IMG/VR virus record: IMGVR_UViG_3300032236_002285
Coordinates: 124,001 to 188,000 of that record
Reading direction: 5' to 3' (one strand)
Length of the DNA: 64,000 bases
The translations under genes were made by a program, and so were the position numbers. Position 1 is the first letter of the stretch; each line of letters starts with the position of its first letter. Shown here piece after piece: positions 2,874-61,188 of the stretch. The notes beneath the pieces were generated by a model that was given only the letters and a program-made list of their open reading frames with translations, searched no databases and was not told the origin of the DNA.

Positions 2874-3473
2874 ATGAATATATGGTTTACATCTGATACA
2901 CACTTTGGTCATACAAATATTGCGGGTCCTAAAGTTTCTAACTGGAAATCTGGTTATAGAGATTTTAACTCTGTTCATGAAATGAATATGGCTTTGGTTG
3001 AAGGTATCAATAAATATGTTAAAGAAGATGATATTCTCTATCATCTTGGTGATTGGAGCTTTGGGGGAGTTCATAATATTTTACAATTTAGAAATTATAT
3101 TGTCTGTAAAAATATACACCTGATTTTAGGTAATCATGACCAGCATATAACTGACAAGGAAATAAAGTATCATGATACTTCATTTAATCCAATTCAGCTT
3201 TTTTCATCAGTCCAAGATGTTTTACACTTGAAGTTGGGTAAAACTGAGTTGTTTCTTTCTCACTATTCTCATCGTGTTTGGTTAGGTAGTCATAAAGGTG
3301 TTATACATCTTTATGGTCACTCACATGGTTCAATTCCTGACTATGGAAAATCAATGGATGTTGGAGTTGATGTTGCTTTTAAGAGATTTGGTGAGTATCG
3401 TCCATTTAATATTGGTGACATAACAAACATTATGTCTAAAAGAGAAGTAGAAAAAATAGACCACCATGGATAG
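2874..3473 (+). CDS. calcineurin-like metallophosphoesterase
   Basis: SDTHFGH, LGDWSFG, GNHD, HGHSH motifs; likely ATG at 2874. Confidence 0.9.
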   Translation: MNIWFTSDTHFGHTNIAGPKVSNWKSGYRDFNSVHEMNMALVEGINKYVKEDDILYHLGDWSFGGVHNILQFRNYIVCKNIHLILGNHDQHITDKEIKYHDTSFNPIQLFSSVQDVLHLKLGKTELFLSHYSHRVWLGSHKGVIHLYGHSHGSIPDYGKSMDVGVDVAFKRFGEYRPFNIGDITNIMSKREVEKIDHHG

Positions 3474-3636
3474 TTTATATAATAGATTATCTATTCTAAA
3501 GATGATTCTTAATTCGAGTTATGGTGAAGGTAAGACCGTAACTAATGTATATGAGGAATCTTATAAAATAAGAAAAAAGATACACTCAATAAAAACTAGA
3601 AAAGAAAAAATTAAACGAATATTCTATTTGAAATAG
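3466..3636 (+). CDS. 56-aa micro-protein: PolB motif-B-like segment plus RKEKIKRIF helix
   Basis: Not in ORF track; manual translation MDSLYNRLSILKMILNSSYGEGKT...KTRKEKIKRIFYLK*; start overlaps upstream stop (ATGGATAG). Confidence 0.7.
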   Translation: MDSLYNRLSILKMILNSSYGEGKTVTNVYEESYKIRKKIHSIKTRKEKIKRIFYLK

Positions 3637-4528: not shown

Positions 4529-4786
4529 ATGTCTTTGTTGGTCAATGTTTATTATGGTGAAGATAAAAATCTTGTAGAATCTTTCTCAATTGAAATAGGA
4601 AGAAAAGTAACATCAATAGATGATGCTAGATTGTTGATAATTGAACATTTAGATAGTTTTTATTTTGATGTTAAATATAAAATAAATGTATTTTCATCTT
4701 TTGATGGTGATACAAGTATTAACTTAAATTTTGAAAAAGATATTTGTTTAAATAGAGAACTCTTAATAAGAAAAATATTAGAATGA
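4529..4786 (+). CDS. hypothetical protein, C-terminal RELLIRKIL helix
   Basis: 85-aa ORF in tight operon. Confidence 0.7.
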   Translation: MSLLVNVYYGEDKNLVESFSIEIGRKVTSIDDARLLIIEHLDSFYFDVKYKINVFSSFDGDTSINLNFEKDICLNRELLIRKILE

Positions 4787-6282: not shown

Positions 6283-6654
6283 ATGAATAAAACAAATTTT
6301 ATAGAGTTTATTAAAGAGTTAGGATTTGCGCAAGTTTGGCAGACAAATCCTAACTATTTTAGTTTAACAACTGACGTGATTGGTCTCGCTAATCAAAATT
6401 ATCAAGCTTTTTGTGACCAATTAAACGTTCATCTTGATGATGAAAATGAATTGGCACAATTATCACTCTCACAACTGAGTACTCATACGAGTGCTGGTAA
6501 AAGTTTTGGTAGATTTGACTTAAAAACATTTGGTGAACCAGGTGATTTTCAGATGCAGATCTTTATGAGTTTTGTGAAAGGTGCTTTTAAGAATCCACCA
6601 AATAATATAATTCAATATATGAGAGATAAAAAAATCAAAAGTATTCTAAAATAA
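6283..6654 (+). CDS. hypothetical protein, C-terminal RDKKIKSIL helix
   Basis: ORF track 6259..6654; likely ATG 6283. Confidence 0.7.
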   Translation: MNKTNFIEFIKELGFAQVWQTNPNYFSLTTDVIGLANQNYQAFCDQLNVHLDDENELAQLSLSQLSTHTSAGKSFGRFDLKTFGEPGDFQMQIFMSFVKGAFKNPPNNIIQYMRDKKIKSILK

Positions 6655-6679: not shown

Positions 6680-7066
6680 ATGAATTATGATCAAGAAATA
6701 ATAATTATAGAAATGACACCTTTTATATTTGAAGATGGTAATACTTACTATTTTAAAATAGTTAAAAGAGGTTCTTCTAATGATTATCATGATCTTTTTG
6801 TTTATGAAAAAATCAAAACAGAAACCAAAAATATCTTTGGTAGAGTAAAAATTGATGAGTGTTTCAATAAGATAAACAAAAGTCCTGAGCTCGTATCTAC
6901 AAGTTTAGATACGAATGAAATTAAAAGAAATATTAAAAAAATATTGATTGCTACTAAAGCTAACCACCGATTAAAAAATTGGGATGGTTTTGTTGGTGAC
7001 ATACCTAATGATGTTAAAACGGCTCTTAAAAGAGAGAGTTCTTTGAAAAACATTTTAGGTGAATAA
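6680..7066 (+). CDS. hypothetical protein, C-terminal RESSLKNIL helix
   Basis: 128-aa ORF. Confidence 0.7.
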   Translation: MNYDQEIIIIEMTPFIFEDGNTYYFKIVKRGSSNDYHDLFVYEKIKTETKNIFGRVKIDECFNKINKSPELVSTSLDTNEIKRNIKKILIATKANHRLKNWDGFVGDIPNDVKTALKRESSLKNILGE

Positions 7067-14171: not shown

Positions 14172-14198
14172 AAATTATATATTAAAAAATCAACTCCA

Positions 14199-41779: not shown

Positions 41780-42214
41780 ATGGAAAAACCAAGTAAAGAA
41801 GATATAATGAAAAAATGGGCTCCTGTTTTAGAGTCTATGGGTATGACTGGATCTCAATTGGATAATTTATCACAACTAACCGAAAATCAACCAAATCAAA
41901 TATTAGAAGAAACTAAAACTGAAGAGTTTCCAAGTTTATTACCAATAGCTATGAGGGTAGCCGCTAGAACAATATCAAATGATTTAATATTTGCTTCACA
42001 AGAAGAAATTGACCAAGTTAAAAAGAAAGTTCAATCTGAAAATCGTGATGGTAAGATTGAAGCCATTATAGAAGATAAAGAATTTACTGAGAAGAAATTA
42101 GAAGATGATGAAGAGTATAAGGAATTGATGAAAAAAGGTGTTAAACCTATGTCGGCACCTTCAGGAACTTTATTCTATTTAGATTATAAGTATGGAGGAG
42201 ACAAAGATGAGTAA
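41780..42214 (+). CDS. mini protein resembling the N-terminal part of a T4 gp23-type major capsid protein
   Basis: KEDIMKKWAPVLESMG, LLPIAMRVAARTI, KPMSAPSGTLFYLDYKYG; about 144 aa; internal RDGKIEAII helix. Confidence 0.7.
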   Translation: MEKPSKEDIMKKWAPVLESMGMTGSQLDNLSQLTENQPNQILEETKTEEFPSLLPIAMRVAARTISNDLIFASQEEIDQVKKKVQSENRDGKIEAIIEDKEFTEKKLEDDEEYKELMKKGVKPMSAPSGTLFYLDYKYGGDKDE

Positions 42215-42392
42215 ATATGTAAGTCCTGGAGTTTATATTAAAGAAACTGATTGGAGTGGTATTTATCCAGTATTTCAAAGAAATCTTTTAAGAAAGAATA
42301 AAATAGCTAAAATCTTTGGTTTAGATGTTAGATCGCTTATTATAACTTCAACTCCAAAAGGTCCAAATAATTTTCCAATTATTGCTTGGTGA
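42207..42392 (+). CDS. 61-aa chimera: tail-sheath N-terminal motif, RKNKIAKIF helix, terminase motif-III-like segment
   Basis: MSKYVSPGVYIKETD...LRKNKIAKIFG...LIITSTPKGPNNF; ATG 42207 overlaps upstream stop (ATGAGTAA). Confidence 0.7.
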   Translation: MSKYVSPGVYIKETDWSGIYPVFQRNLLRKNKIAKIFGLDVRSLIITSTPKGPNNFPIIAW

Positions 42393-42421
42393 GGAACATG
42401 AGTGTATAATATATACTCATA

Positions 42422-42754
42422 ATGATTACCGTTTATCTTATATGTGCTGAATTTGACGGCACAAGATTATTTAAAATAGGACATACTCGTAGAAGAGTAG
42501 AAGAAAGAATGAAAGAGTTTAGAACGGGAAATGGCTCTGATCTTTATATAGTCAATCAGTTTAAATCTAAATGGGGCACTAAAATAGAAGCTCAACTTCA
42601 TAGAAGATTCAATTCAAAAAAAGCTAATGGTGAGTGGTTCGCCTTAGATGATGATGATGTGATGGAATTTAAACCTTATTGTGAACTAGCACATAATAAC
42701 TTTGAATTAATAACTACACAAAATAGTTGGTACTTAGAAAGAGGTAAATTCTAA
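42422..42754 (+). CDS. GIY-YIG-related T5orf172/MUG113-like protein
   Basis: VYLI...FKIGHT...EERMKEFRTGN...E.QLHRRF...GEWF. Confidence 0.8.
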   Translation: MITVYLICAEFDGTRLFKIGHTRRRVEERMKEFRTGNGSDLYIVNQFKSKWGTKIEAQLHRRFNSKKANGEWFALDDDDVMEFKPYCELAHNNFELITTQNSWYLERGKF

Positions 42755-43061: not shown

Positions 43062-43284
43062 TATGAATTTTGAAAATTACTACTTAGATATACAAAAAAT
43101 ATCTCAAATACCTTCACTTGAAGATAGGGACCAAATACATAGATACTATATGGATATGCTTATTTTTTTTACTGATGGTTCTGGTAGAGAAAAAGTATCA
43201 CAATCAATTATGAAAACACTTATCAAATCTGGGTATTTAATTGATTCTCGTGATGAAAAATTAGGTGAATTGTTAAATGGATAA
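43054..43284 (+). CDS. hypothetical protein, C-terminal RDEKLGELL helix
   Basis: 76-aa ORF containing IFFTDGS. Confidence 0.65.
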   Translation: MFNMNFENYYLDIQKISQIPSLEDRDQIHRYYMDMLIFFTDGSGREKVSQSIMKTLIKSGYLIDSRDEKLGELLNG

Positions 43285-47184: not shown

Positions 47185-47201
47185 TATATATTAAATATAT
47201 A
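47185..47201. promoter_or_regulatory. back-to-back AATATATA late-promoter candidates
   Basis: TATATATT (47185-47192, minus) and AATATATA (47194-47201, plus) between divergent genes. Confidence 0.55.
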
Positions 47202-47224: not shown

Positions 47225-47413
47225 ATGCTAGAAATTAAAGTAGAAGGTGTTGGTATTGAAAAAGCCTTAAAAACACTTAAAAGAAAATTTGACAAAACTA
47301 AAACTCTTAGACAATTAAGAGATAGAAAAGAATTTGTTAAAAAATCAGTTAAAAGAAGAGCTGAAATAAACAAAGCTAAATATGTTCAAGAAAAGTTTGG
47401 TAACAACGATTAA
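47225..47413 (+). CDS. rpsU: 30S ribosomal protein bS21
   Basis: IEKALKTLKRKFDKTKTLRQLRDRKEFVKKSVKRR...KAKY resembles Bacteroidota bS21. Confidence 0.92.
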   Translation: MLEIKVEGVGIEKALKTLKRKFDKTKTLRQLRDRKEFVKKSVKRRAEINKAKYVQEKFGNND

Positions 47414-47693
47414 GAATTTATTCAGTGATAATCAAAGAACATTTGATTTAGGTAAACTACAAAAGGTTGGTTTTATAAAACCTTTAGAAGATCTATCTGG
47501 TTGTCCTAATTGTAAAAGTAAAAACATATCTTGGAAGTTCTTTATACCAGTAGATGGCTCAAAACCTACACAACCATCTTTATCTATCTGTAAAGATTGT
47601 GGATATCAAGATATAAGAGGTGAATTTGAAAAAACAAACAAATCATTACTTAGAGAAAAGAAAATTAATAAGATATTAGATGGGATTCAATAA
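47382..47693 (+). CDS. zinc-ribbon protein with REKKINKIL helix
   Basis: CPNC...CKDC. Confidence 0.7.
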   Translation: MFKKSLVTTIKNLFSDNQRTFDLGKLQKVGFIKPLEDLSGCPNCKSKNISWKFFIPVDGSKPTQPSLSICKDCGYQDIRGEFEKTNKSLLREKKINKILDGIQ

Positions 47694-56197: not shown

Positions 56198-56228
56198 TTT
56201 GGTATTAAACTTTATTTGATTATATTTG
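56198..56228 (+). promoter_or_regulatory. Bacteroidota-type sigma70 promoter
   Basis: TTTG 56198-56201, 19-nt spacer, TATATTTG 56221-56228. Confidence 0.75.
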
Positions 56229-56237
56229 TAAAATAAT

Positions 56238-56972
56238 ATGCAAAAGAAAAAGATATTGATTTTTACCGGAGCTGGAGTTTCTGCTGAAAGTGGCGTTGCT
56301 ACTTTTAGAACAGGAGATGATGGGCTTTGGTATAATCACAAAGTAGAAGATGTTGCCACACCTGGTGGATGGCGTAGAGATAGAGAAAAAGTTCTTAATT
56401 TCTACAATATGAGACGTGCTCAACTTAAAGATGTTGAGCCAAACATAGCGCATAAAATAATTACCGATTTAGAAAAAGATTATGATGTTACTGTTGTAAC
56501 TCAGAATGTTGATGATTTACATGAAAGAGCTGGTTCAACAAATATAATTCATCTACACGGTGAATTAACAAAAGCAAGAGGTTGTATGTATGAACATAAA
56601 TCATCTGCTTTAGATAGTATTATTGATATAGGTTACGAACCGATTAAAATTGGTGATAAGTGTCCAACAACTGGTTCACAATTAAGACCTCATATTGTTT
56701 GGTTTGGAGAAGGATTAGATCAATCTGATATAGACAGAGCATCAGCAGCTGCTAATGATTGTAATATTTGTATTATTGTTGGTACTTCAATGCAAGTAGC
56801 ACCGGCTAATACTATTCCATTTTTAACAAAAGAATCAACTAACATTTACTATGTAGATCCATCTGATGCTGATTTTTATGTAGCAGAATATAGAAAAGAA
56901 CTCTTCCACCACTATCAAGAACTAGCATCAACTGGAATGGTAAAAGTTATAGAAGATATAAAAAAATTATAA
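56238..56972 (+). CDS. cobB: Sir2 family NAD-dependent deacylase
   Basis: GAGVSAESG, TFR, QNVDDLHERAG, HLHG, LRPHIVWFGE, VGTSMQV. Confidence 0.93.
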   Translation: MQKKKILIFTGAGVSAESGVATFRTGDDGLWYNHKVEDVATPGGWRRDREKVLNFYNMRRAQLKDVEPNIAHKIITDLEKDYDVTVVTQNVDDLHERAGSTNIIHLHGELTKARGCMYEHKSSALDSIIDIGYEPIKIGDKCPTTGSQLRPHIVWFGEGLDQSDIDRASAAANDCNICIIVGTSMQVAPANTIPFLTKESTNIYYVDPSDADFYVAEYRKELFHHYQELASTGMVKVIEDIKKL

Positions 56973-56974
56973 TT

Positions 56975-57247
56975 ATGAAAAAGGAATATTACAGTTACGA
57001 TTGTTACAAGTCCGCTTCATCATATGGTGATTTTATTAAGTCATTAGGCACATATACCTATGATGATGAAACTGACTCTATCGAATATAATGGTTATATT
57101 GATAGTTCTAGTGTTTATTCAGATTTAACAAGTCAAATAATGAAGTACTATAAAGATAGAGAAACACCTGAACAAAAAGCTATCCGTGAAGCTAAAGAAA
57201 AAGCTGAAAAAAGAAATAATACTATTAATCAAATTTTAGGTGAATAA
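56975..57247 (+). CDS. hypothetical protein, C-terminal RNNTINQIL helix
   Basis: 90-aa ORF. Confidence 0.7.
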   Translation: MKKEYYSYDCYKSASSYGDFIKSLGTYTYDDETDSIEYNGYIDSSSVYSDLTSQIMKYYKDRETPEQKAIREAKEKAEKRNNTINQILGE

Positions 57248-57810
57248 TGTCACATATATCAATTATTGATTGGATTACGGCTTTACTAATAGCATTGCCT
57301 TTATTTACTTTGTTTATTTCAATTCCAAGTTTTGTTGCTATGTATAAACTTGGTTTCAAAGCTTATCGTCAACAACTTCGTGTTTTGAAAATTATGAATC
57401 GTAAGATATCAAGTGGTTATAAAGTCATACATAATCAAGTTTATACATATGCTGGAACGGGTTATAATGTGCCAAATACAGTAACTAGAGTTGAAACTAA
57501 TCATTTTTTCCCAATTGTTATTGATAAAGACCATTTAATAATCTTAACAAAGAAGGAAGGACCTTTCAATACACTTTATATGCAATATTGTGAATTTAAA
57601 AATAAAGAATGGTCAAATGACAATATTGAAATAAAAACTTCAACTTGTTTATTTACTCAACTTCTTAATGATAGATTTCAAAAAAAAGTTGATAATCTTA
57701 TGAAAGAATCTGTTCAAATTGAAGGTGTTGAAAATCTAAACGAGTTATTAAATAGCCAAATAACTTCTATCAAAAGAGAAGAAGTATTAAATTCTATATT
57801 AAATGGATAA
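57247..57810 (+). CDS. membrane-anchored hypothetical protein, C-terminal REEVLNSIL helix
   Basis: N-terminal TM segment. Confidence 0.7.
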   Translation: MSHISIIDWITALLIALPLFTLFISIPSFVAMYKLGFKAYRQQLRVLKIMNRKISSGYKVIHNQVYTYAGTGYNVPNTVTRVETNHFFPIVIDKDHLIILTKKEGPFNTLYMQYCEFKNKEWSNDNIEIKTSTCLFTQLLNDRFQKKVDNLMKESVQIEGVENLNELLNSQITSIKREEVLNSILNG

Positions 57811-57976
57811 GAAAGATATTGTTATAGTAGATTATTTTACTAAACTAACAACTACTGAGCTTTCTGATGATGGTATTGAGGCATTTCGGAAATTAAACTT
57901 TCGTGTTTTAAATATTCGCAAGTGGAGAGGAAAAATAGAAAGACGAAAAGAAAAAATTAAAAGAATCTATGGATAA
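57803..57976 (+). CDS. 57-aa micro-protein: SF4 helicase Walker-B-like segment plus RKEKIKRIY helix
   Basis: Not in ORF track; manual translation MDKKDIVIVDYFTKL...IERRKEKIKRIYG*; ATGGATAA overlaps at both ends. Confidence 0.7.
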   Translation: MDKKDIVIVDYFTKLTTTELSDDGIEAFRKLNFRVLNIRKWRGKIERRKEKIKRIYG

Positions 57977-58157
57977 CAGAGACGTTATTGAAATCTTTGG
58001 TCAATTACTTAATAGTAATAAAGAAATTATGATGTTGAATTCTAGACAAACTGGTAAATCATCATCAGCGGCTCTTGTTAACTGGAGAAAAACATTTGAT
58101 AAGTATAATCGTGCTCAAGATAGAAAAGAAACCATAAAACGACTTTTTAATATATAA
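57969..58157 (+). CDS. 62-aa micro-protein: terminase Walker-A-like segment plus RKETIKRLF helix
   Basis: IMMLNSRQTGKS...DRKETIKRLFNI. Confidence 0.7.
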   Translation: MDNRDVIEIFGQLLNSNKEIMMLNSRQTGKSSSAALVNWRKTFDKYNRAQDRKETIKRLFNI

Positions 58158-58170
58158 TTAATAAAAAGAA

Positions 58171-58737
58171 ATGAATATTATGAATTTACAAGAATTATTA
58201 AATAAATGGGGTATCAAATGTGATGTTAATACTTTGCTTGCTATGTGGAATGAATCTCATAGATCTTATCACACTTTAACTCACTTAAATGATTTAATTG
58301 AACAAATTAACGAAAGTAAGTCAAAGTACTCTGAAAAAGAATATGAGAAGTTGATGTTAGCCGCACTTTTTCATGATTGTGTTTACGATCCAATGAAAAG
58401 TGATAATGAGGAAAAATCAGCTGACTTCTTTATGGAATGTTGCTCTGATAAATCAAATCCAGACGTTTTAGAAGTAAAACAAATGATTCTTGATACAAAG
58501 ACTCACGAAGCTACAACAAACCTTTCAGAGTCGTTTAATCATTATGATATGAGTATTGTAGAAAGAGATTTTGACCAATTATTAGATTGGGAAAATGGTA
58601 TTCACGAAGAGTATAAAGCTTATGGTGAAGCTTACAAAGAAGGTAGATTGAAATTTTTAGAATCTGTTTTAGATAAATACCCTCATAATACAGAAAACTT
58701 ACTTAAATTAATTGAGTGGGTAAAAAATAATTATTAA
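58171..58737 (+). CDS. HD-superfamily metal-dependent phosphohydrolase
   Basis: RSYHTLTH, LAALFHDCVYDP, NEEKSA, HYD. Confidence 0.85.
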   Translation: MNIMNLQELLNKWGIKCDVNTLLAMWNESHRSYHTLTHLNDLIEQINESKSKYSEKEYEKLMLAALFHDCVYDPMKSDNEEKSADFFMECCSDKSNPDVLEVKQMILDTKTHEATTNLSESFNHYDMSIVERDFDQLLDWENGIHEEYKAYGEAYKEGRLKFLESVLDKYPHNTENLLKLIEWVKNNY

Positions 58738-58738
58738 A

Positions 58739-59629
58739 ATGTTTATTAAAAAATTTGAAGATTTTAATCAGTTTAATTTAATTATAGAAAGACTACATAT
58801 AAATAAAGAAATTGATGAATATTCTGATAAAATTTATCCTATAATATCCGATTCTGATAAATTTTATTTTGAATTTACCGATATACCCAGTAAATTAAAT
58901 ATATCTAAACTGGTTATAAATATTAAAGATATGGAACCTGGTTTATCTGGTCAATTAGATTTAAATAAATCTAAAGAGACTAAAAACGGATGGATTATCT
59001 ATGTAGATTTGAAGAAAAAATTTCATTTATATACACTTAAACATGAGTTGAATCATGCTCTTAGACTTACTTTAATTGGTAAGGATAAAATGATTAAAAA
59101 CCTAAACTATATAAAATCTCAAAATATATTCATATCTAAAGATAATGAAATGGAATACTTTTTCTATTTAATATATCTGGCAAATGATGAGGAAATAAAC
59201 TCAAAGATTATGGAAACTAATGGGTTTATAAGAGAAGTTATGACTAAATGGGAAGTTAATAAATTAACAAAAGAACAATTTGATTATATAATAAAAAGTA
59301 CTCATGCTTTTAAACAATCTAATGAATTAATTAATTTTAAATGTGATGATTTGTTTAAGAATTATGATGAAAATAAATTAAATAAGTTATTTTGTATATT
59401 AGAGGAAAATAAATCCGAACTGGACAGAATACAAGATAGTAAATTTTATAAATTAAAATTGATAATTAAGATATTTAAAGATATATTTAACAATAAGACC
59501 GGTTTTAATCAAGATGATAAAAATATCTATAAACCTAAAAAGGGTAAAAAATTTTATGATACTTGGATACCATCACAAGGAGATAAACTAAAAAAAAGAA
59601 TCTATTCATTATATGAACACTACCAATAA
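58739..59629 (+). CDS. protein with HExxH zinc-binding motif and MFIKKFEDF N-terminus
   Basis: LKHELNHA plus downstream DEE. Confidence 0.6.
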   Translation: MFIKKFEDFNQFNLIIERLHINKEIDEYSDKIYPIISDSDKFYFEFTDIPSKLNISKLVINIKDMEPGLSGQLDLNKSKETKNGWIIYVDLKKKFHLYTLKHELNHALRLTLIGKDKMIKNLNYIKSQNIFISKDNEMEYFFYLIYLANDEEINSKIMETNGFIREVMTKWEVNKLTKEQFDYIIKSTHAFKQSNELINFKCDDLFKNYDENKLNKLFCILEENKSELDRIQDSKFYKLKLIIKIFKDIFNNKTGFNQDDKNIYKPKKGKKFYDTWIPSQGDKLKKRIYSLYEHYQ

Positions 59630-60062
59630 CATGCAATATGGAGTAATTTATATTAAAATTTGCCCTAAGGGTTCTGGTGCTTGGATAAAACATTGTCATA
59701 TCTTATCAGCAACACCAATGTCATTTCAAAAAAATGTAGTTGATATTAAGAATAATATTAACTCAAAATACTCAGATGATATTGTGATTAAAATGGATCT
59801 TAGTATTCACCCCGGTTGTACTACAACGGCTGAAAGTGTTGAAAAGGTAGCAACTGATATGTATAATCAATTTTGTGAATTAGCCGAAAGACAAGGTATT
59901 CCTAATTCAATTAGATGTGTTTATTCAGTTGGTGAAATTAAAGATGTTAGTGTAGATTCAACACATCATATAATGCCGGTAAATGGTAAATATGATGATG
60001 TTATGATTAGAGTTGGTCACTTCTTAGACGAATTTGATGAACCTGGATTATTTAAAATATAA
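59613..60062 (+). CDS. hypothetical protein
   Basis: 149-aa ORF. Confidence 0.65.
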   Translation: MNTTNNMQYGVIYIKICPKGSGAWIKHCHILSATPMSFQKNVVDIKNNINSKYSDDIVIKMDLSIHPGCTTTAESVEKVATDMYNQFCELAERQGIPNSIRCVYSVGEIKDVSVDSTHHIMPVNGKYDDVMIRVGHFLDEFDEPGLFKI

Positions 60063-60084
60063 AAACCTCTCAATTGAGAGGTTT
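60061..60084. terminator. bidirectional terminator, identical to 150-173
   Basis: AAAACCTCTCAATTGAGAGGTTTT. Confidence 0.85.
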
Positions 60085-60087
60085 TTT

Positions 60088-60465: not shown

Positions 60466-61188
60466 TTAAAAATTCATAATTATTAATTCTGTACCCATAA
60501 TTGTTATTTTAGAATCAAATTTACAATTAGGATAAAGCTCTTCTATTCCATCAAAGTAGTAATAGCTTAGTAAAAATCTACCTTTAATATTATTTAGAAC
60601 TTCAGCAAGTTCTTTATGAGTTTCTTTATTGAAATCGTGATTGATGTAATATTCTTCTTTACCAAAATAAGGAGGATCTACATAAAAGAATGTTGATTCA
60701 GAATCATACATCTCAATTACTTTTTTATAATCGTAGTTGTGTATTTTATTTATTTTATACAAGTGATACTCATAAGCTCGATATTTCATTTTAAGTATAT
60801 TGAACTCACTATTATCTCTCCAAGAGTCTTTTCCTATTTCATATGGTGATGAGCAGCAAAGTACAACTAACCAGTAAAGAGAAAGTAACATTTCATCCTT
60901 TTCGGTTATCATGTTTTTCAAGCAACTTCTGTAGTATTCTTCATCTACTTCAGTTTTTTTGAATATCTCAATAAAGTCAGGATTTTTTAGATTTTTGAAT
61001 AGTAAATAGTTTAGATTGTTTTTATCATTATAGATAAAATTAACATCCTTAAACTTAGTAAAATCTAGTGCAAAAAAAATACCAAACATTCCACCAAATG
61101 GTTCCACATAAGTGGAAATATTCGTAGGTATGTTTGGTATTATGAAATTCGCAAATTTAGATTTTTCTCCTAAGTAGGGTATTAGCAT
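60466..61188 (-). CDS. Dam-like (D12 class) N6-adenine DNA methyltransferase
   Basis: IPYLGEK, YVEPFGG, IYND, FFYVDPPY, FLLSYY. Confidence 0.88.
   Translation of the reverse strand: MLIPYLGEKSKFANFIIPNIPTNISTYVEPFGGMFGIFFALDFTKFKDVNFIYNDKNNLNYLLFKNLKNPDFIEIFKKTEVDEEYYRSCLKNMITEKDEMLLSLYWLVVLCCSSPYEIGKDSWRDNSEFNILKMKYRAYEYHLYKINKIHNYDYKKVIEMYDSESTFFYVDPPYFGKEEYYINHDFNKETHKELAEVLNNIKGRFLLSYYYFDGIEELYPNCKFDSKITIMGTELIIMNF

What the first reader, a model, noticed from the sequence alone, without database searches (positions are those of the whole stretch)
57803..58157. Tandem coupled micro-ORFs carrying a helicase Walker B and a terminase Walker A
57803-57976 (absent from the ORF track) begins KDIVIVDYF, like SF4 DnaB/gp41 motif H2 (hhhhDY). 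57969-58157 carries LNSRQTGKS, like T4 gp17 SRQLGKT. Both end in the shared helix and are chained by ATGGATAA overlaps downstream of the sirtuin, in a unit with a host-sigma promoter. Inference: early-expressed ATPase-motif decoys present before the real packaging and replication motors appear.
Basis: partly seen in the sequence, partly recalled or inferred. Interest (0 to 1): 0.8.

Follow-up and report, generated by a model that had tools for sequence, protein, structure and literature searches.

The report
Megaphage micro-genes; one terminase-derived
Two overlapping genes for tiny proteins in a giant freshwater phage are real and conserved; one looks like a 40-residue piece cut from the phage's DNA-packaging motor and fused to a short basic tail that many small proteins of this phage share, while the "helicase" look of the other is no better than chance.

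Summary
ORFs 57803-57976 (A57) and 57969-58157 (B62) exist, are chained by ATGGATAA start/stop overlaps, carry the quoted motifs and share a C-terminal helix. Both are real genes: 36 and 63 clusters of intact homologues of the same length, all in uncultured freshwater jumbo and megaphage contigs, with dN/dS of about 0.3-0.6.

B62 residues 4-45 align to the terminase large subunit (TerL) segment from the Q-motif helix through strand 1 and Walker A to helix 1 (hhalign probability 90%, E 1.6e-6). The flanks add signal beyond the motif, and the match is specific to TerL. But the Walker lysine is lost in distant members, the protein is only 42-70 aa long, and AlphaFold predicts helices. It is a TerL-derived relic, not an ATPase.

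A57's "Walker B" is motif-only: shuffling the flanks gives the same score, and hhhhD[YH] is common.

The tail (RKE.IKR[IL][FY]) ends 10 of the window's 71 genes, against 0.09 expected. One of these, at 3466-3636, carries DNA polymerase B motif B.

A conserved Bacteroidota-type promoter-like site precedes the sirtuin. B62's last codons overlap a recurrent phage promoter-like 11-mer.

The decoy idea and the claim of early expression are untested. No RNA data were available.

The parts
57803..57976 (+). A57: a 57-aa micro-protein gene whose start overlaps the stop of the upstream 187-aa gene by 8 nt (ATGGATAA)
   Evidence: ORF. 36 homologue clusters. Alignment A2 has invariant M1 K3 I6 D10 N37 and the block R48-K53. 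dN/dS. No Pfam, PHROG, PDB or PADLOC hit.
57815..57835 (+). A57 block DIVIVDY (residues 5-11), which looks like Walker B / helicase motif H2
   Evidence: The best hhalign match to gp41-type helicases falls here (score 26.7, E 5.6e-4). hhhhD[YH] is expected 0.3 times per window.
57926..57973 (+). A57 C-terminal basic tail, WRGKIERRKEKIKRIYG
   Evidence: R48, K49, E50, K51, I52, K53 and Y56 are invariant across 40 sequences. The tail aligns with the B62 tail. AlphaFold predicts a helix at 38-56 with low confidence.
57969..58157 (+). B62: a 62-aa micro-protein gene whose start overlaps the A57 stop by 8 nt (ATGGATAA)
   Evidence: ORF. 63 homologue clusters. An exhaustive profile search found 50 representatives, all 33-108 aa (most under 75) apart from two spurious repeat proteins. 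Alignment A1 has invariant R26 Q27 G29 R52 K53 F60 N61 I62.
57978..58103 (+). B62 residues 4-45: a segment resembling TerL from the Q-motif helix through strand 1 and Walker A to helix 1
   Evidence: hhalign of A1 against 8 TerL sequences: probability 81%, E 1.2e-5. Against 9 TerL sequences including Lak-B6: probability 90%, E 1.6e-6, 39 columns aligned to T4 gp17 144-182. With the motif kept and flanks shuffled: 23.0+-2.9 and 26.0+-2.9 against real scores of 37.7 and 42.4, with 0/200 and 0/120 shuffles reaching the real score. Against polymerase and helicase profiles the score is only 14.8 and 14.9.
58041..58061 (+). B62 motif SRQTGKS (residues 25-31), in the same register as T4 gp17 SRQLGKT
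   Evidence: The pattern is unique in the window, with about 0 expected. The lysine is replaced by A, R or S in 7 of the 17 real distant members read.
58119..58154 (+). B62 C-terminal basic tail, DRKETIKRLFNI
   Evidence: R52, K53, F60, N61 and I62 are invariant. AlphaFold gives pLDDT 96 for this helix.
58146..58156 (+). Phage promoter-like 11-mer TTTAATATATA, overlapping the last codons and stop of B62, 23 nt upstream of the conserved ATG of the HD phosphohydrolase gene (58180)
   Evidence: The sequence TTTAATATATA[AG] is invariant at nucleotide level in 10 loci, including two where a different gene follows. The window holds 10 exact copies, all 4-30 nt upstream of an ATG on the same strand.
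56198..56228 (+). Bacteroidota-type promoter-like element (TTTG-N19-TATATTTG) 9 nt upstream of the sirtuin's ATG; the probable start of the transcription unit that contains A57 and B62
   Evidence: One search gives the match. One search shows the TAnnTTTG part directly upstream of the sirtuin ATG in most of the relatives fetched. The window-wide count of this pattern is at chance (4 found, 3.5 expected), so the case rests on position and conservation.
56238..57810 (+). Upstream genes of the same unit: Sir2 (56238-56972), o90 (56975-57247, tail ...NTINQILGE) and o187 (57247-57810, hydrophobic N-terminus, tail ...EEVLNSILNG)
   Evidence: The genes are joined by TAATG and ATGGATAA overlaps.
58171..60062 (+). 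Downstream genes: HD phosphohydrolase (58171/58180-58737), o296 and o149
   Evidence: phrog_19425 phosphohydrolase, 5.9e-19. The HD gene is syntenic with B62 in most relatives.
60061..60086 (.). Bidirectional terminator-like hairpin that closes the + strand gene run
   Evidence: 11-bp stem with T runs on both strands.
3466..3636 (+). C56: a third micro-protein of the same build (56 aa; KMILNSSYG plus the tail RKEKIKRIF), also joined to the upstream gene through ATGGATAG
   Evidence: 25 homologue clusters with K12, N16 and G20 invariant and Y19 nearly so. hhalign places it as a paralogue of B62 (probability 74%). Its best match in DNA polymerase B is motif B (25.5, E 1.3e-3), but this is motif-only.

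Best explanation
A57 and B62 are two real, conserved, translationally coupled micro-protein genes of a lineage of freshwater jumbo and megaphages (130-635 kb, about 29% GC, probably infecting Bacteroidota). They belong to a larger set of small proteins in this phage that share one C-terminal module, a short basic helix of the form [RK][RK]E.IK.[IL][FY].

B62 is that tail fused to about 42 residues that most likely derive from the phage terminase large subunit: the helix after the Q motif, strand 1, the terminase-type Walker A loop and helix 1. It cannot be an ATPase. It lacks the rest of the fold, and its wider family does not keep the Walker lysine. It is therefore an exapted gene fragment, used as a small binding module.

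A57 is the same tail fused to an unrelated 40-residue head. The head's DIVIVD[YH] block is conserved, but its likeness to Walker B / helicase H2 cannot be told apart from chance.

Inferred, not shown. The tail is a docking peptide that brings these small proteins to one common partner. Its spacing, K..[IL]..[IL][FY]G-stop, is that of the clamp-binding C-terminus of T4 DNA polymerase. The genes are transcribed from the host-type promoter in front of the sirtuin, and translated by reinitiation at the overlapping start/stop sites.
For: Real genes: searches show intact ORFs of constant length in dozens of clusters, conserved synteny and dN/dS below 1.

TerL derivation of B62:
- hhalign probability 81% then 90%, E 1.2e-5 then 1.6e-6, covering residues 4-45.
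- The best single TerL is from the Bacteroidota megaphage Lak-B6 (score 36.0).
- All 8 single TerLs align at Walker A, and 7 of 8 score above every unrelated window protein.
- The flanks contribute about 16 score units.
- Off-target enzyme profiles give only 11-15.
- The helicase alignment contains its own Walker A, yet B62 does not match it.
- The motif is unique in the window.

Not an enzyme: length 42-70 aa. The exhaustive search found no family member longer than 108 aa. The lysine is variable. AlphaFold predicts helices, with low confidence at the loop.

Shared tail. The tail is anchored to the gene's own stop codon, not to the next start (gaps from -14 to +25 nt). Codons vary under a conserved peptide. 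The T4 gp43 C-terminus reads KASLDFLFG.

Transcription unit.
Against: - HMMER profile searches of B62 against PDB, Pfam and 1.84 billion proteins found no terminase. Only 1 of 41 members touched Terminase_6N, at E 0.068.
- The aligned stretch is short (32-39 columns).
- hhalign E-values for such small profiles are optimistic. One other short ORF (42192-42392) scored 33.4 against TerL, and its nature is unclear.
- AlphaFold does not predict a strand before the loop, and Foldseek found nothing.
- No function of the tail was tested. Its helical hydrophobic moment is low (0.12-0.35).
- The phage's own TerL was not available for comparison.
- No expression data exist.
Confidence: 0.5

Rival explanations
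1. Immune decoys. The micro-proteins display catalytic-site segments of core phage enzymes (TerL, helicase, DNA polymerase) early in infection. They occupy or blunt bacterial sensors that recognise those enzymes, such as Avs-type STAND proteins or motif-reading abortive-infection systems.
For: Three tail-bearing micro-proteins each match the nucleotide-binding motif of a different core enzyme, in a clean diagonal pattern: 37.7, 26.7 and 25.5 on target, against 10.9-15.4 off target. TerL, DNA polymerase (family A in that study) and helicase/RecA ATPase are all documented triggers of Avs families (PMC13581612). The unit has a host-type promoter-like site.
Against: Characterised Avs sensors bind whole conserved folds by shape complementarity, independently of catalytic residues. 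Two of the three matches are motif-only. B62 is predicted helical. There are no hits to known defence or anti-defence models. Expression timing is unknown.
Confidence: 0.1
2. Pure coincidence. A57 and B62 are ordinary lineage-specific small phage proteins of unknown function, and all motif resemblances, including B62 to TerL, are chance or convergence.
For: No HMMER-level hit to any ATPase. The A57 and C56 matches are motif-only. The target enzymes were chosen after the motifs had been seen. hhhhD[YH] is common.
Against: B62's flanks add about 5 SD beyond the motif. The alignment spans the whole non-tail part of the protein. The match is specific to TerL over other P-loop proteins. The motif pattern has about 0 expected occurrences.
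Confidence: 0.2
3. Replisome or packaging regulators built on a hub-docking tail. The tail is a sliding-clamp-binding (PIP-like) or other hub-binding peptide, and the heads compete with the full-length enzymes for that hub.
For: The tail pattern K..[IL]..[IL][FY]G-stop has the same spacing and terminal position as the T4 gp43 clamp-binding C-terminus KASLDFLFG. Ten genes share the tail. The heads resemble DNA-handling enzymes.
Against: The phage tails are basic, whereas the T4 peptide is acidic. No clamp gene was identified in the window. No complex prediction was possible. The resemblance is a 4-position pattern.
Confidence: 0.12
4. Membrane-targeted small proteins. The tail is a C-terminal amphipathic membrane-targeting helix of the MinD/FtsA type, assembling the coupled products at the membrane together with the transmembrane protein o187.
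For: The tail IKRLF resembles, from my memory, the E. coli MinD C-terminus ...FLKRLFGG. o187 has a hydrophobic N-terminal segment. The genes are translationally coupled.
Against: The hydrophobic moment of the tails is low (0.12-0.35) and their mean hydrophobicity is negative.
Confidence: 0.05
5. Not protein-coding. The conservation reflects regulatory DNA or RNA such as promoters and coupling signals. Alternatively, the pair is a toxin-antitoxin module.
For: The last 12 nt of B62 are invariant as DNA and match a recurrent promoter-like 11-mer. The pair consists of small overlapping genes.
Against: ORF length and frame are kept over deep divergence. Synonymous changes occur within conserved peptide blocks. 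The tail is anchored to the stop codon rather than to the next start. There is no PADLOC or Pfam toxin-antitoxin hit.
Confidence: 0.03

Closest known systems
Terminase large subunit, T4 gp17 type (Pfam Terminase_6N), N-terminal ATPase subdomain
   Same: B62 residues 4-45 align to gp17 144-182. The Walker A register matches ([SA]RQxGK[ST]), as do the preceding hydrophobic strand and the following helix with a conserved W. The closest single TerL is from the Bacteroidota megaphage Lak-B6.
   Different: B62 is 62 aa, against about 600 for a terminase. It has no Walker B, coupling motif or nuclease domain. The lysine is dispensable in its family. It carries an unrelated basic tail. HMMER finds no terminase.
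SF4 DnaB / T4 gp41 helicase, motif H2 (Walker B)
   Same: DIVIVDY in A57 matches PDIVIVDYLG in phage gp41-type helicases.
   Different: Only 7 residues match and the flanks add nothing. There is no H1, H1a, H3 or H4. The aspartate is followed by H in most homologues. A57 is 57 aa.
microProteins and dominant-negative fragments: small proteins evolved from one piece of a larger protein that act by binding its partners (a concept known from plants and animals; cited from my knowledge)
   Same: A short protein made of a recognisable piece of a large enzyme plus an interaction element. It is conserved and expressed from its own gene.
   Different: No partner is known. The retained piece is a buried catalytic segment rather than a known interaction domain. 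I know of no such class described for phages.
Short phage peptides read by abortive-infection systems (the Gol region of T4 gp23 read by Lit; capsid motifs read by CapRel), as cited in PMC13581612
   Same: Short segments of core phage proteins can be recognised by host immunity.
   Different: Those are parts of the full-length protein that trigger defence. They are not separate genes, and no decoy of this kind is known.
C-terminal clamp-binding peptide of T4/RB69 DNA polymerase (T4 gp43 ...KASLDFLFG)
   Same: Located at the extreme C-terminus, with the spacing K..[LI]..[LI][FY]G.
   Different: The T4 peptide is acidic and the phage tails are basic. Binding has not been tested.

Membership tests
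P-loop NTPase / terminase large subunit ATPase (Terminase_6N) | Walker A with an invariant lysine (GK[ST]) | tested here: not met
   K30 is at least 90% conserved among close homologues. In 7 of the 17 real distant family members read it is replaced: GAS, GRS, GSS or GAT.
P-loop NTPase / terminase large subunit ATPase (Terminase_6N) | A complete ATPase core: Walker B (hhhhDE), coupling motif and about 250 aa of alpha/beta fold | tested here: not met
   B62 is 62 aa. The exhaustive profile search found only 33-108-aa relatives. AlphaFold predicts two helices.
P-loop NTPase / terminase large subunit ATPase (Terminase_6N) | Significant sequence-profile match to the family | tested here: inconclusive
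   hmmscan: 1 of 41 members at E 0.068, below the cutoff. hhalign against TerL alignments: probability 81-90% over 32-39 columns. This supports local homology of a fragment, not membership.
SF4 DnaB/gp41 replicative helicase | Motifs H1, H1a, H2, H3 and H4 in a RecA-type core | tested here: not met
   Only an H2-like heptad is present. There are no Pfam or PDB hits. The hhalign score is explained by the motif alone.
Family B DNA polymerase (for the related micro-ORF C56) | Motifs A, B and C in the palm and fingers domains | tested here: not met
   Only KxxxNSxYG is present, in a 56-aa protein. The match is motif-only. There are no Pfam or PDB hits.
Anti-defence decoy of Avs-type sensors | Binds the sensor, or suppresses its activation by the cognate phage protein | not testable with these tools
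The literature says recognition is at the level of the fold. There is no match to PADLOC models.
Type II toxin-antitoxin pair | A recognisable toxin or antitoxin domain | tested here: not met
   There are no Pfam, PHROG or PADLOC hits.
Translationally coupled operon genes | Start codon overlapping or abutting the upstream stop, conserved in relatives | tested here: met
   The 8-nt overlaps ATGGATAA, ATGATTAA or ATGAATAA are present in the window and in L002, L009, L010 and L013.
MinD/FtsA-type C-terminal membrane-targeting helix | Strongly amphipathic terminal helix | tested here: inconclusive
   Hydrophobic moment is 0.12-0.35 and mean hydrophobicity is below 0, which is weak for such a helix.

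The most novel reading that the evidence does not exclude
This megaphage lineage encodes a class of micro-proteins, each made of a nucleotide-binding catalytic segment copied from a core phage enzyme and fused to one common basic docking tail. The segments are TerL Walker A in B62, polymerase B motif B in C56 and helicase H2 in A57. In this reading they act as mimics of those enzymes, either as decoys for host immune sensors that read core phage proteins or as competitive regulators at a shared hub such as the sliding clamp.
Probability: 0.12. Interest if true: 0.85.

Novelty: new variant of a known kind. Interest (0 to 1): 0.55.

Why it matters
If B62 really is a domesticated 40-residue piece of the terminase ATPase, it would be a natural example of a strand / P-loop / helix fragment living on as an independent, conserved protein. 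That bears on how gene fragments become new phage genes. It also bears on the minimal phosphate-loop peptides that have so far been studied only as laboratory constructs.

The shared C-terminal tail on about one in seven genes of the window points to a common docking or targeting system in megaphages that has not, to my knowledge, been described.

The decoy reading would be a new anti-defence principle, but nothing here shows it.

For annotation, the work adds three conserved micro-gene families, a recurrent phage promoter-like 11-mer and a host-type promoter. Together these allow a first split of this genome into transcription classes.

Tried and rejected
- Near-identity search in cultured and GenBank phages: none found.
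- HMMER profiles of the A57, B62 and C56 families against PDB and Pfam: only noise. PHROGs and PADLOC: nothing.
- Exhaustive profile search of 1.84 billion proteins with the B62 family: only small relatives. The two long hits (P0120, P0131) are repeat artefacts.
- AlphaFold models: B62 has pLDDT 79 and is helical, with low confidence at the motif. A57 has pLDDT 63. Foldseek against PDB with the B62 model gave 0 hits.
- ESM Atlas look-alikes: for B62, P-loop ATPase fragments at 0.79-0.84, below the level that means anything. For A57 and C56, nothing relevant.
- A57 as TerL Walker B or polymerase motif A: scores 15.4 and 13.6, which is background.
- Translational bypassing of the T4 gene 60 type at GGA-TAA: rejected. 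The take-off codon is not conserved (GAT TAA and GAA TAA in relatives).
- The tail as a by-product of the next gene's initiation region: rejected. The tail is anchored to its own stop, while the gap to the next start ranges from -14 to +25 nt.
- Sigma-70 promoters: at chance.
- Context of distant B62 relatives: contigs too short, or no DNA held. An alignment-based locus search returned only the known contigs.
- RNA runs: none listed.
- The phage's own TerL, polymerase and helicase could not be reached. They are not in the window, and the tools cannot walk the 476-kb contig.
Full report
**Where the window comes from**

The window is part of the 476-kb viral contig IMGVR_UViG_3300032236_002285. 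It is about 29% GC and has no near match among GenBank phages. The same stretch occurs in lake-water and freshwater metagenomes.

Related contigs of 89-436 kb carry the same gene module, as does the 635-kb uncultured megaphage LR745206.1. LR745206.1 belongs to the group of the largest known phages (PMC9723777).

**The observation**

All the stated features are present.
- A57 is 57803-57976, 57 aa, starting MDKKDIVIVDYF.
- B62 is 57969-58157, 62 aa, containing LNSRQTGKS.
- Each overlaps the gene before it by the 8-nt ATGGATAA.

The two genes sit in a run of + strand genes:
- Sir2 (56238-56972; Pfam SIR2, 1.8e-45);
- o90 (56975-57247);
- o187 (57247-57810), which has a hydrophobic N-terminus;
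- A57, then B62;
- an HD phosphohydrolase (phrog_19425, 5.9e-19);
- two further ORFs.

The run is closed by a bidirectional hairpin at 60061-60086.

**Are they genes?**

Yes.
- A57 has 36 clusters, and B62 has 63, at 90% identity in a 5.8-billion-protein collection. Almost all are 54-64 aa.
- Both are intact and syntenic in related phage contigs at 43-70% identity.
- The overlapping start/stop arrangement is kept, although its letters change (ATGATTAA, ATGAATAA).
- Pairwise dN/dS is mostly 0.3-0.6, and codons vary within the conserved peptide blocks.
- No Pfam, PHROG, PADLOC or PDB family matches either protein.

**B62 and the terminase**

The family alignment has invariant R26, Q27 and G29, with K24, K30, S31 and W39 nearly invariant. 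This gives hhhh-K-[SA]-R-Q-x-G-K-S ... W, followed by the tail RKETIKRLFNI.

The sequence-profile evidence is mixed.
- HMMER sees no terminase.
- Profile-profile comparison with an alignment of eight T4-type TerL N-terminal domains, taken from GenBank phage records, gives probability 81%, E 1.2e-5 and score 37.7. It places B62 15-46 on gp17 151-182.
- Adding the TerL of the Bacteroidota megaphage Lak-B6 (recoded stops read as X) raises this to probability 90%, E 1.6e-6 and 39 columns, with B62 4-45 on gp17 144-182. That is the whole non-tail part of B62.
- Lak-B6 is also the best single TerL (score 36.0).

The controls support the match.
- Shuffling all columns gives 12.6+-2.4 (maximum 21.7).
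- Keeping the 8-residue motif and shuffling only the flanks gives 23.0+-2.9 and 26.0+-2.9. None of 200 or 120 shuffles reaches the real score.
- Against 70 other proteins of the window, the best unrelated score is 19.9. All eight TerLs align at Walker A, and seven of them score above that.
- Against polymerase and helicase alignments B62 scores 14.8 and 14.9, even though the helicase alignment has its own Walker A.
- The pattern [SAGCP]RQ.GK[ST] occurs once in the window's 20,241 residues, with about 0 expected.

I conclude that the B62 head is probably a relic of the TerL segment running from the Q-motif helix through strand 1 and Walker A to helix 1.

It is not an ATPase.
- The family is 42-70 aa long.
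- An exhaustive search of 1.84 billion proteins finds no family member longer than 108 aa.
- The Walker lysine is A, R or S in 7 of the 17 real distant members read.
- AlphaFold predicts two helices, with pLDDT 56-67 over the loop and 96 over the tail.
- Foldseek finds nothing.

One caution applies. hhalign E-values for such tiny profiles are optimistic. Another short ORF (42192-42392) scores 33.4 against TerL, and its nature is unclear.

**A57 and the helicase**

The family keeps M[ID]K[KR]DIVIVD[HY] and the tail RKYRGRIERRKEKIKRIY. Its best local match in T4 gp41, and in an alignment of eight gp41-type helicases, is indeed motif H2 (score 26.7, E 5.6e-4).

However, with the heptad kept and the flanks shuffled the score is 26.6+-2.1, and 54 of 120 shuffles reach the real value. 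All the signal is therefore in the seven residues.

The pattern hhhhD[YH] is expected 0.3 times per window and occurs twice. The broader Walker-B-like pattern occurs 12 times. AlphaFold gives a low-confidence three-helix model.

**The shared helix**

hhalign between the two families matches only the last 14 columns (E 2.3e-4). The pattern [RK][DEKRN][EKNDSL].[ILV]..[ILV][LFYV], followed by at most four residues, ends 10 of the window's 71 genes (10 of the 40 that are 200 aa or shorter). There are 5 internal matches in 20,241 residues, which gives 0.09 expected at gene ends. The pattern was defined after seeing the data, but the excess is more than 100-fold.

The tail is anchored to the gene's own stop codon, while the distance to the next start varies from -14 to +25 nt. 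Its codons vary under a constant peptide. It is therefore a protein feature, not a by-product of the next gene's initiation site.

Its spacing, K..[IL]..[IL][FY]G-stop, equals that of the T4 polymerase C-terminus KASLDFLFG, which I know as the clamp-binding peptide. This is a lead only. Amphipathicity is weak, which argues against a MinD-like membrane anchor.

**A third micro-gene of the same build**

ORF 3466-3636 (C56, 56 aa) is a paralogue of B62 by hhalign (probability 74%). It is again joined to its upstream gene by ATGGATAG. Its 25 homologue clusters keep K12, N16 and G20 invariant, and Y19 nearly so. This is family B polymerase motif B, KxxxNSxYG.

It is the top hit of a polymerase B profile among all window proteins (20.9, next best 19.1). 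Family against family it scores 25.5. But the match is motif-only (25.8+-2.0 with flanks shuffled). The pattern is expected 0.02 times per window.

The three families give a clean diagonal against TerL, helicase and polymerase: 37.7, 26.7 and 25.5 on target, against 10.9-15.4 off target. This is suggestive of a class of 'catalytic segment plus tail' micro-proteins. It is solid only for B62, and the target enzymes were chosen after the motifs had been seen.

**Transcription signals**

Sigma-70-like sites are at chance. Directly upstream of the sirtuin lies TTTG-N19-TATATTTG (56198-56228). This fits the Bacteroidota -33/-7 promoter consensus as I remember it. Its TAnnTTTG part is kept directly upstream of the sirtuin ATG in most of the relatives fetched, but the pattern is not enriched window-wide.

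The last codons and stop of B62 (TTT AAT ATA TAA) are invariant as DNA in ten loci, even where a different gene follows. They form the 11-mer TTTAATATATA. The window has ten exact copies of it, all 4-30 nt upstream of an ATG on the same strand, including in front of virion and tail-fibre genes.

This is most simply a phage-specific promoter-like element. If so, the HD gene and what follows have their own promoter, and part of the invariance of B62's FNI end is a DNA constraint.

Expression timing itself could not be checked, because no RNA runs were listed.

**The decoy idea**

TerL, DNA polymerase (family A in that study) and helicase/RecA ATPases are all known triggers of Avs sensors. However, the sensors characterised so far bind whole conserved folds over extended interfaces, independently of catalytic residues (PMC13581612). 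That makes a 60-residue helical peptide an unlikely decoy for them. Motif-reading systems (Lit, CapRel) exist but are not known for these enzymes. I keep the idea as a minority rival (0.1).

**Verdict**

The finding is real and more interesting than a pair of anonymous ORFs. Its headline is half right: 'terminase Walker A' stands and 'helicase Walker B' does not. Its functional inference is unsupported.

The best-supported statement has three parts:
- the two genes encode conserved, coupled micro-proteins of a megaphage lineage;
- one of them is an exapted terminase fragment;
- both carry a widespread C-terminal tail of unknown, probably docking, function.

Noticed in passing
window 10546, 14176-14186(-), 17509, 22923, 27042, 32308, 40435, 42767, 47185-47195(-), 58146: There are ten exact copies of TTTAATATATA, all at gene ends or between genes and 4-30 nt upstream of an ATG on the same strand. 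Some precede virion and tail-fibre genes. Three lie only 4-5 nt from the ATG, which may mean leaderless transcripts. This is probably a phage-specific promoter-like element (41 matches at up to 1 mismatch, against 23 expected).
   Followed up: partly
window 3466-3636, 4529-4786, 6283-6654, 6680-7066, 43063-43284, 47382-47693, 56975-58157: Ten of the 71 genes end in the same basic tail, [RK][DEKRN][EKNDSL].[ILV]..[ILV][LFYV], against 0.09 expected. All are small + strand genes followed closely by another gene. The spacing resembles the T4 gp43 clamp-binding C-terminus.
   Followed up: partly
window 3466-3636 (+): A 56-aa conserved micro-protein (25 clusters) whose invariant residues spell family B polymerase motif B, KxxxNSxYG, followed by the shared tail. 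It is a paralogue of B62 by hhalign. The polymerase likeness is motif-only.
   Followed up: yes
window 41780-42754 (+): A cluster of pieces of core genes lies beside a homing-endonuclease-like gene. ORF 41780-42214 ends in a major-head-protein block (phrog_138, 6e-5). ORF 42192-42392 begins like a tail sheath (YVSPGVYIKETD, my reading) and then matches TerL 266-295, interrupted by a tail-like RKNKIAKIFG. ORF 42422-42754 is a T5orf172/GIY-YIG-like endonuclease (phrog_8130, 3.5e-15).
   Followed up: partly
window 56198-56228: A Bacteroidota-type promoter-like element (TTTG-N19-TAnnTTTG) lies 9 nt upstream of the sirtuin start, and its TAnnTTTG part is kept in most of the relatives fetched. Together with the lack of Shine-Dalgarno-like sequences, this hints at a Bacteroidota host.
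   Followed up: partly
window 3466, 43277, 57803, 57969: The start/stop overlap ATGGATAR is used at four gene junctions, so that the downstream proteins begin MD and the upstream ones end in G. The octamer occurs 19 times in the window, against 8.7 expected.
   Followed up: partly
L004 550-699: In contig IMGVR_UViG_3300045921_000484 the B62 homologue is interrupted. A 32-aa ORF carries the loop region, and the tail lies in another frame. This is either a pseudogene or an assembly error.
   Followed up: no
window 60061-60086 and 60466-61188(-): A perfect 11-bp bidirectional terminator-like hairpin lies between the converging gene runs. Next to it is a Dam-type N6-adenine methyltransferase (Pfam MethyltransfD12, 1.1e-17).
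   Followed up: no
L003 5193-5789, L007 5201-5797, L008 4681-5982: In some relatives the o90/o187/A57 genes are replaced by other genes: a 198-aa protein that looks by eye like a methyltransferase, or a 433-aa protein. Where the first of these occurs, B62 still sits next to the HD gene; the contig with the 433-aa protein has no B62 homologue. B62 is therefore the more persistent of the two micro-genes.
   Followed up: no
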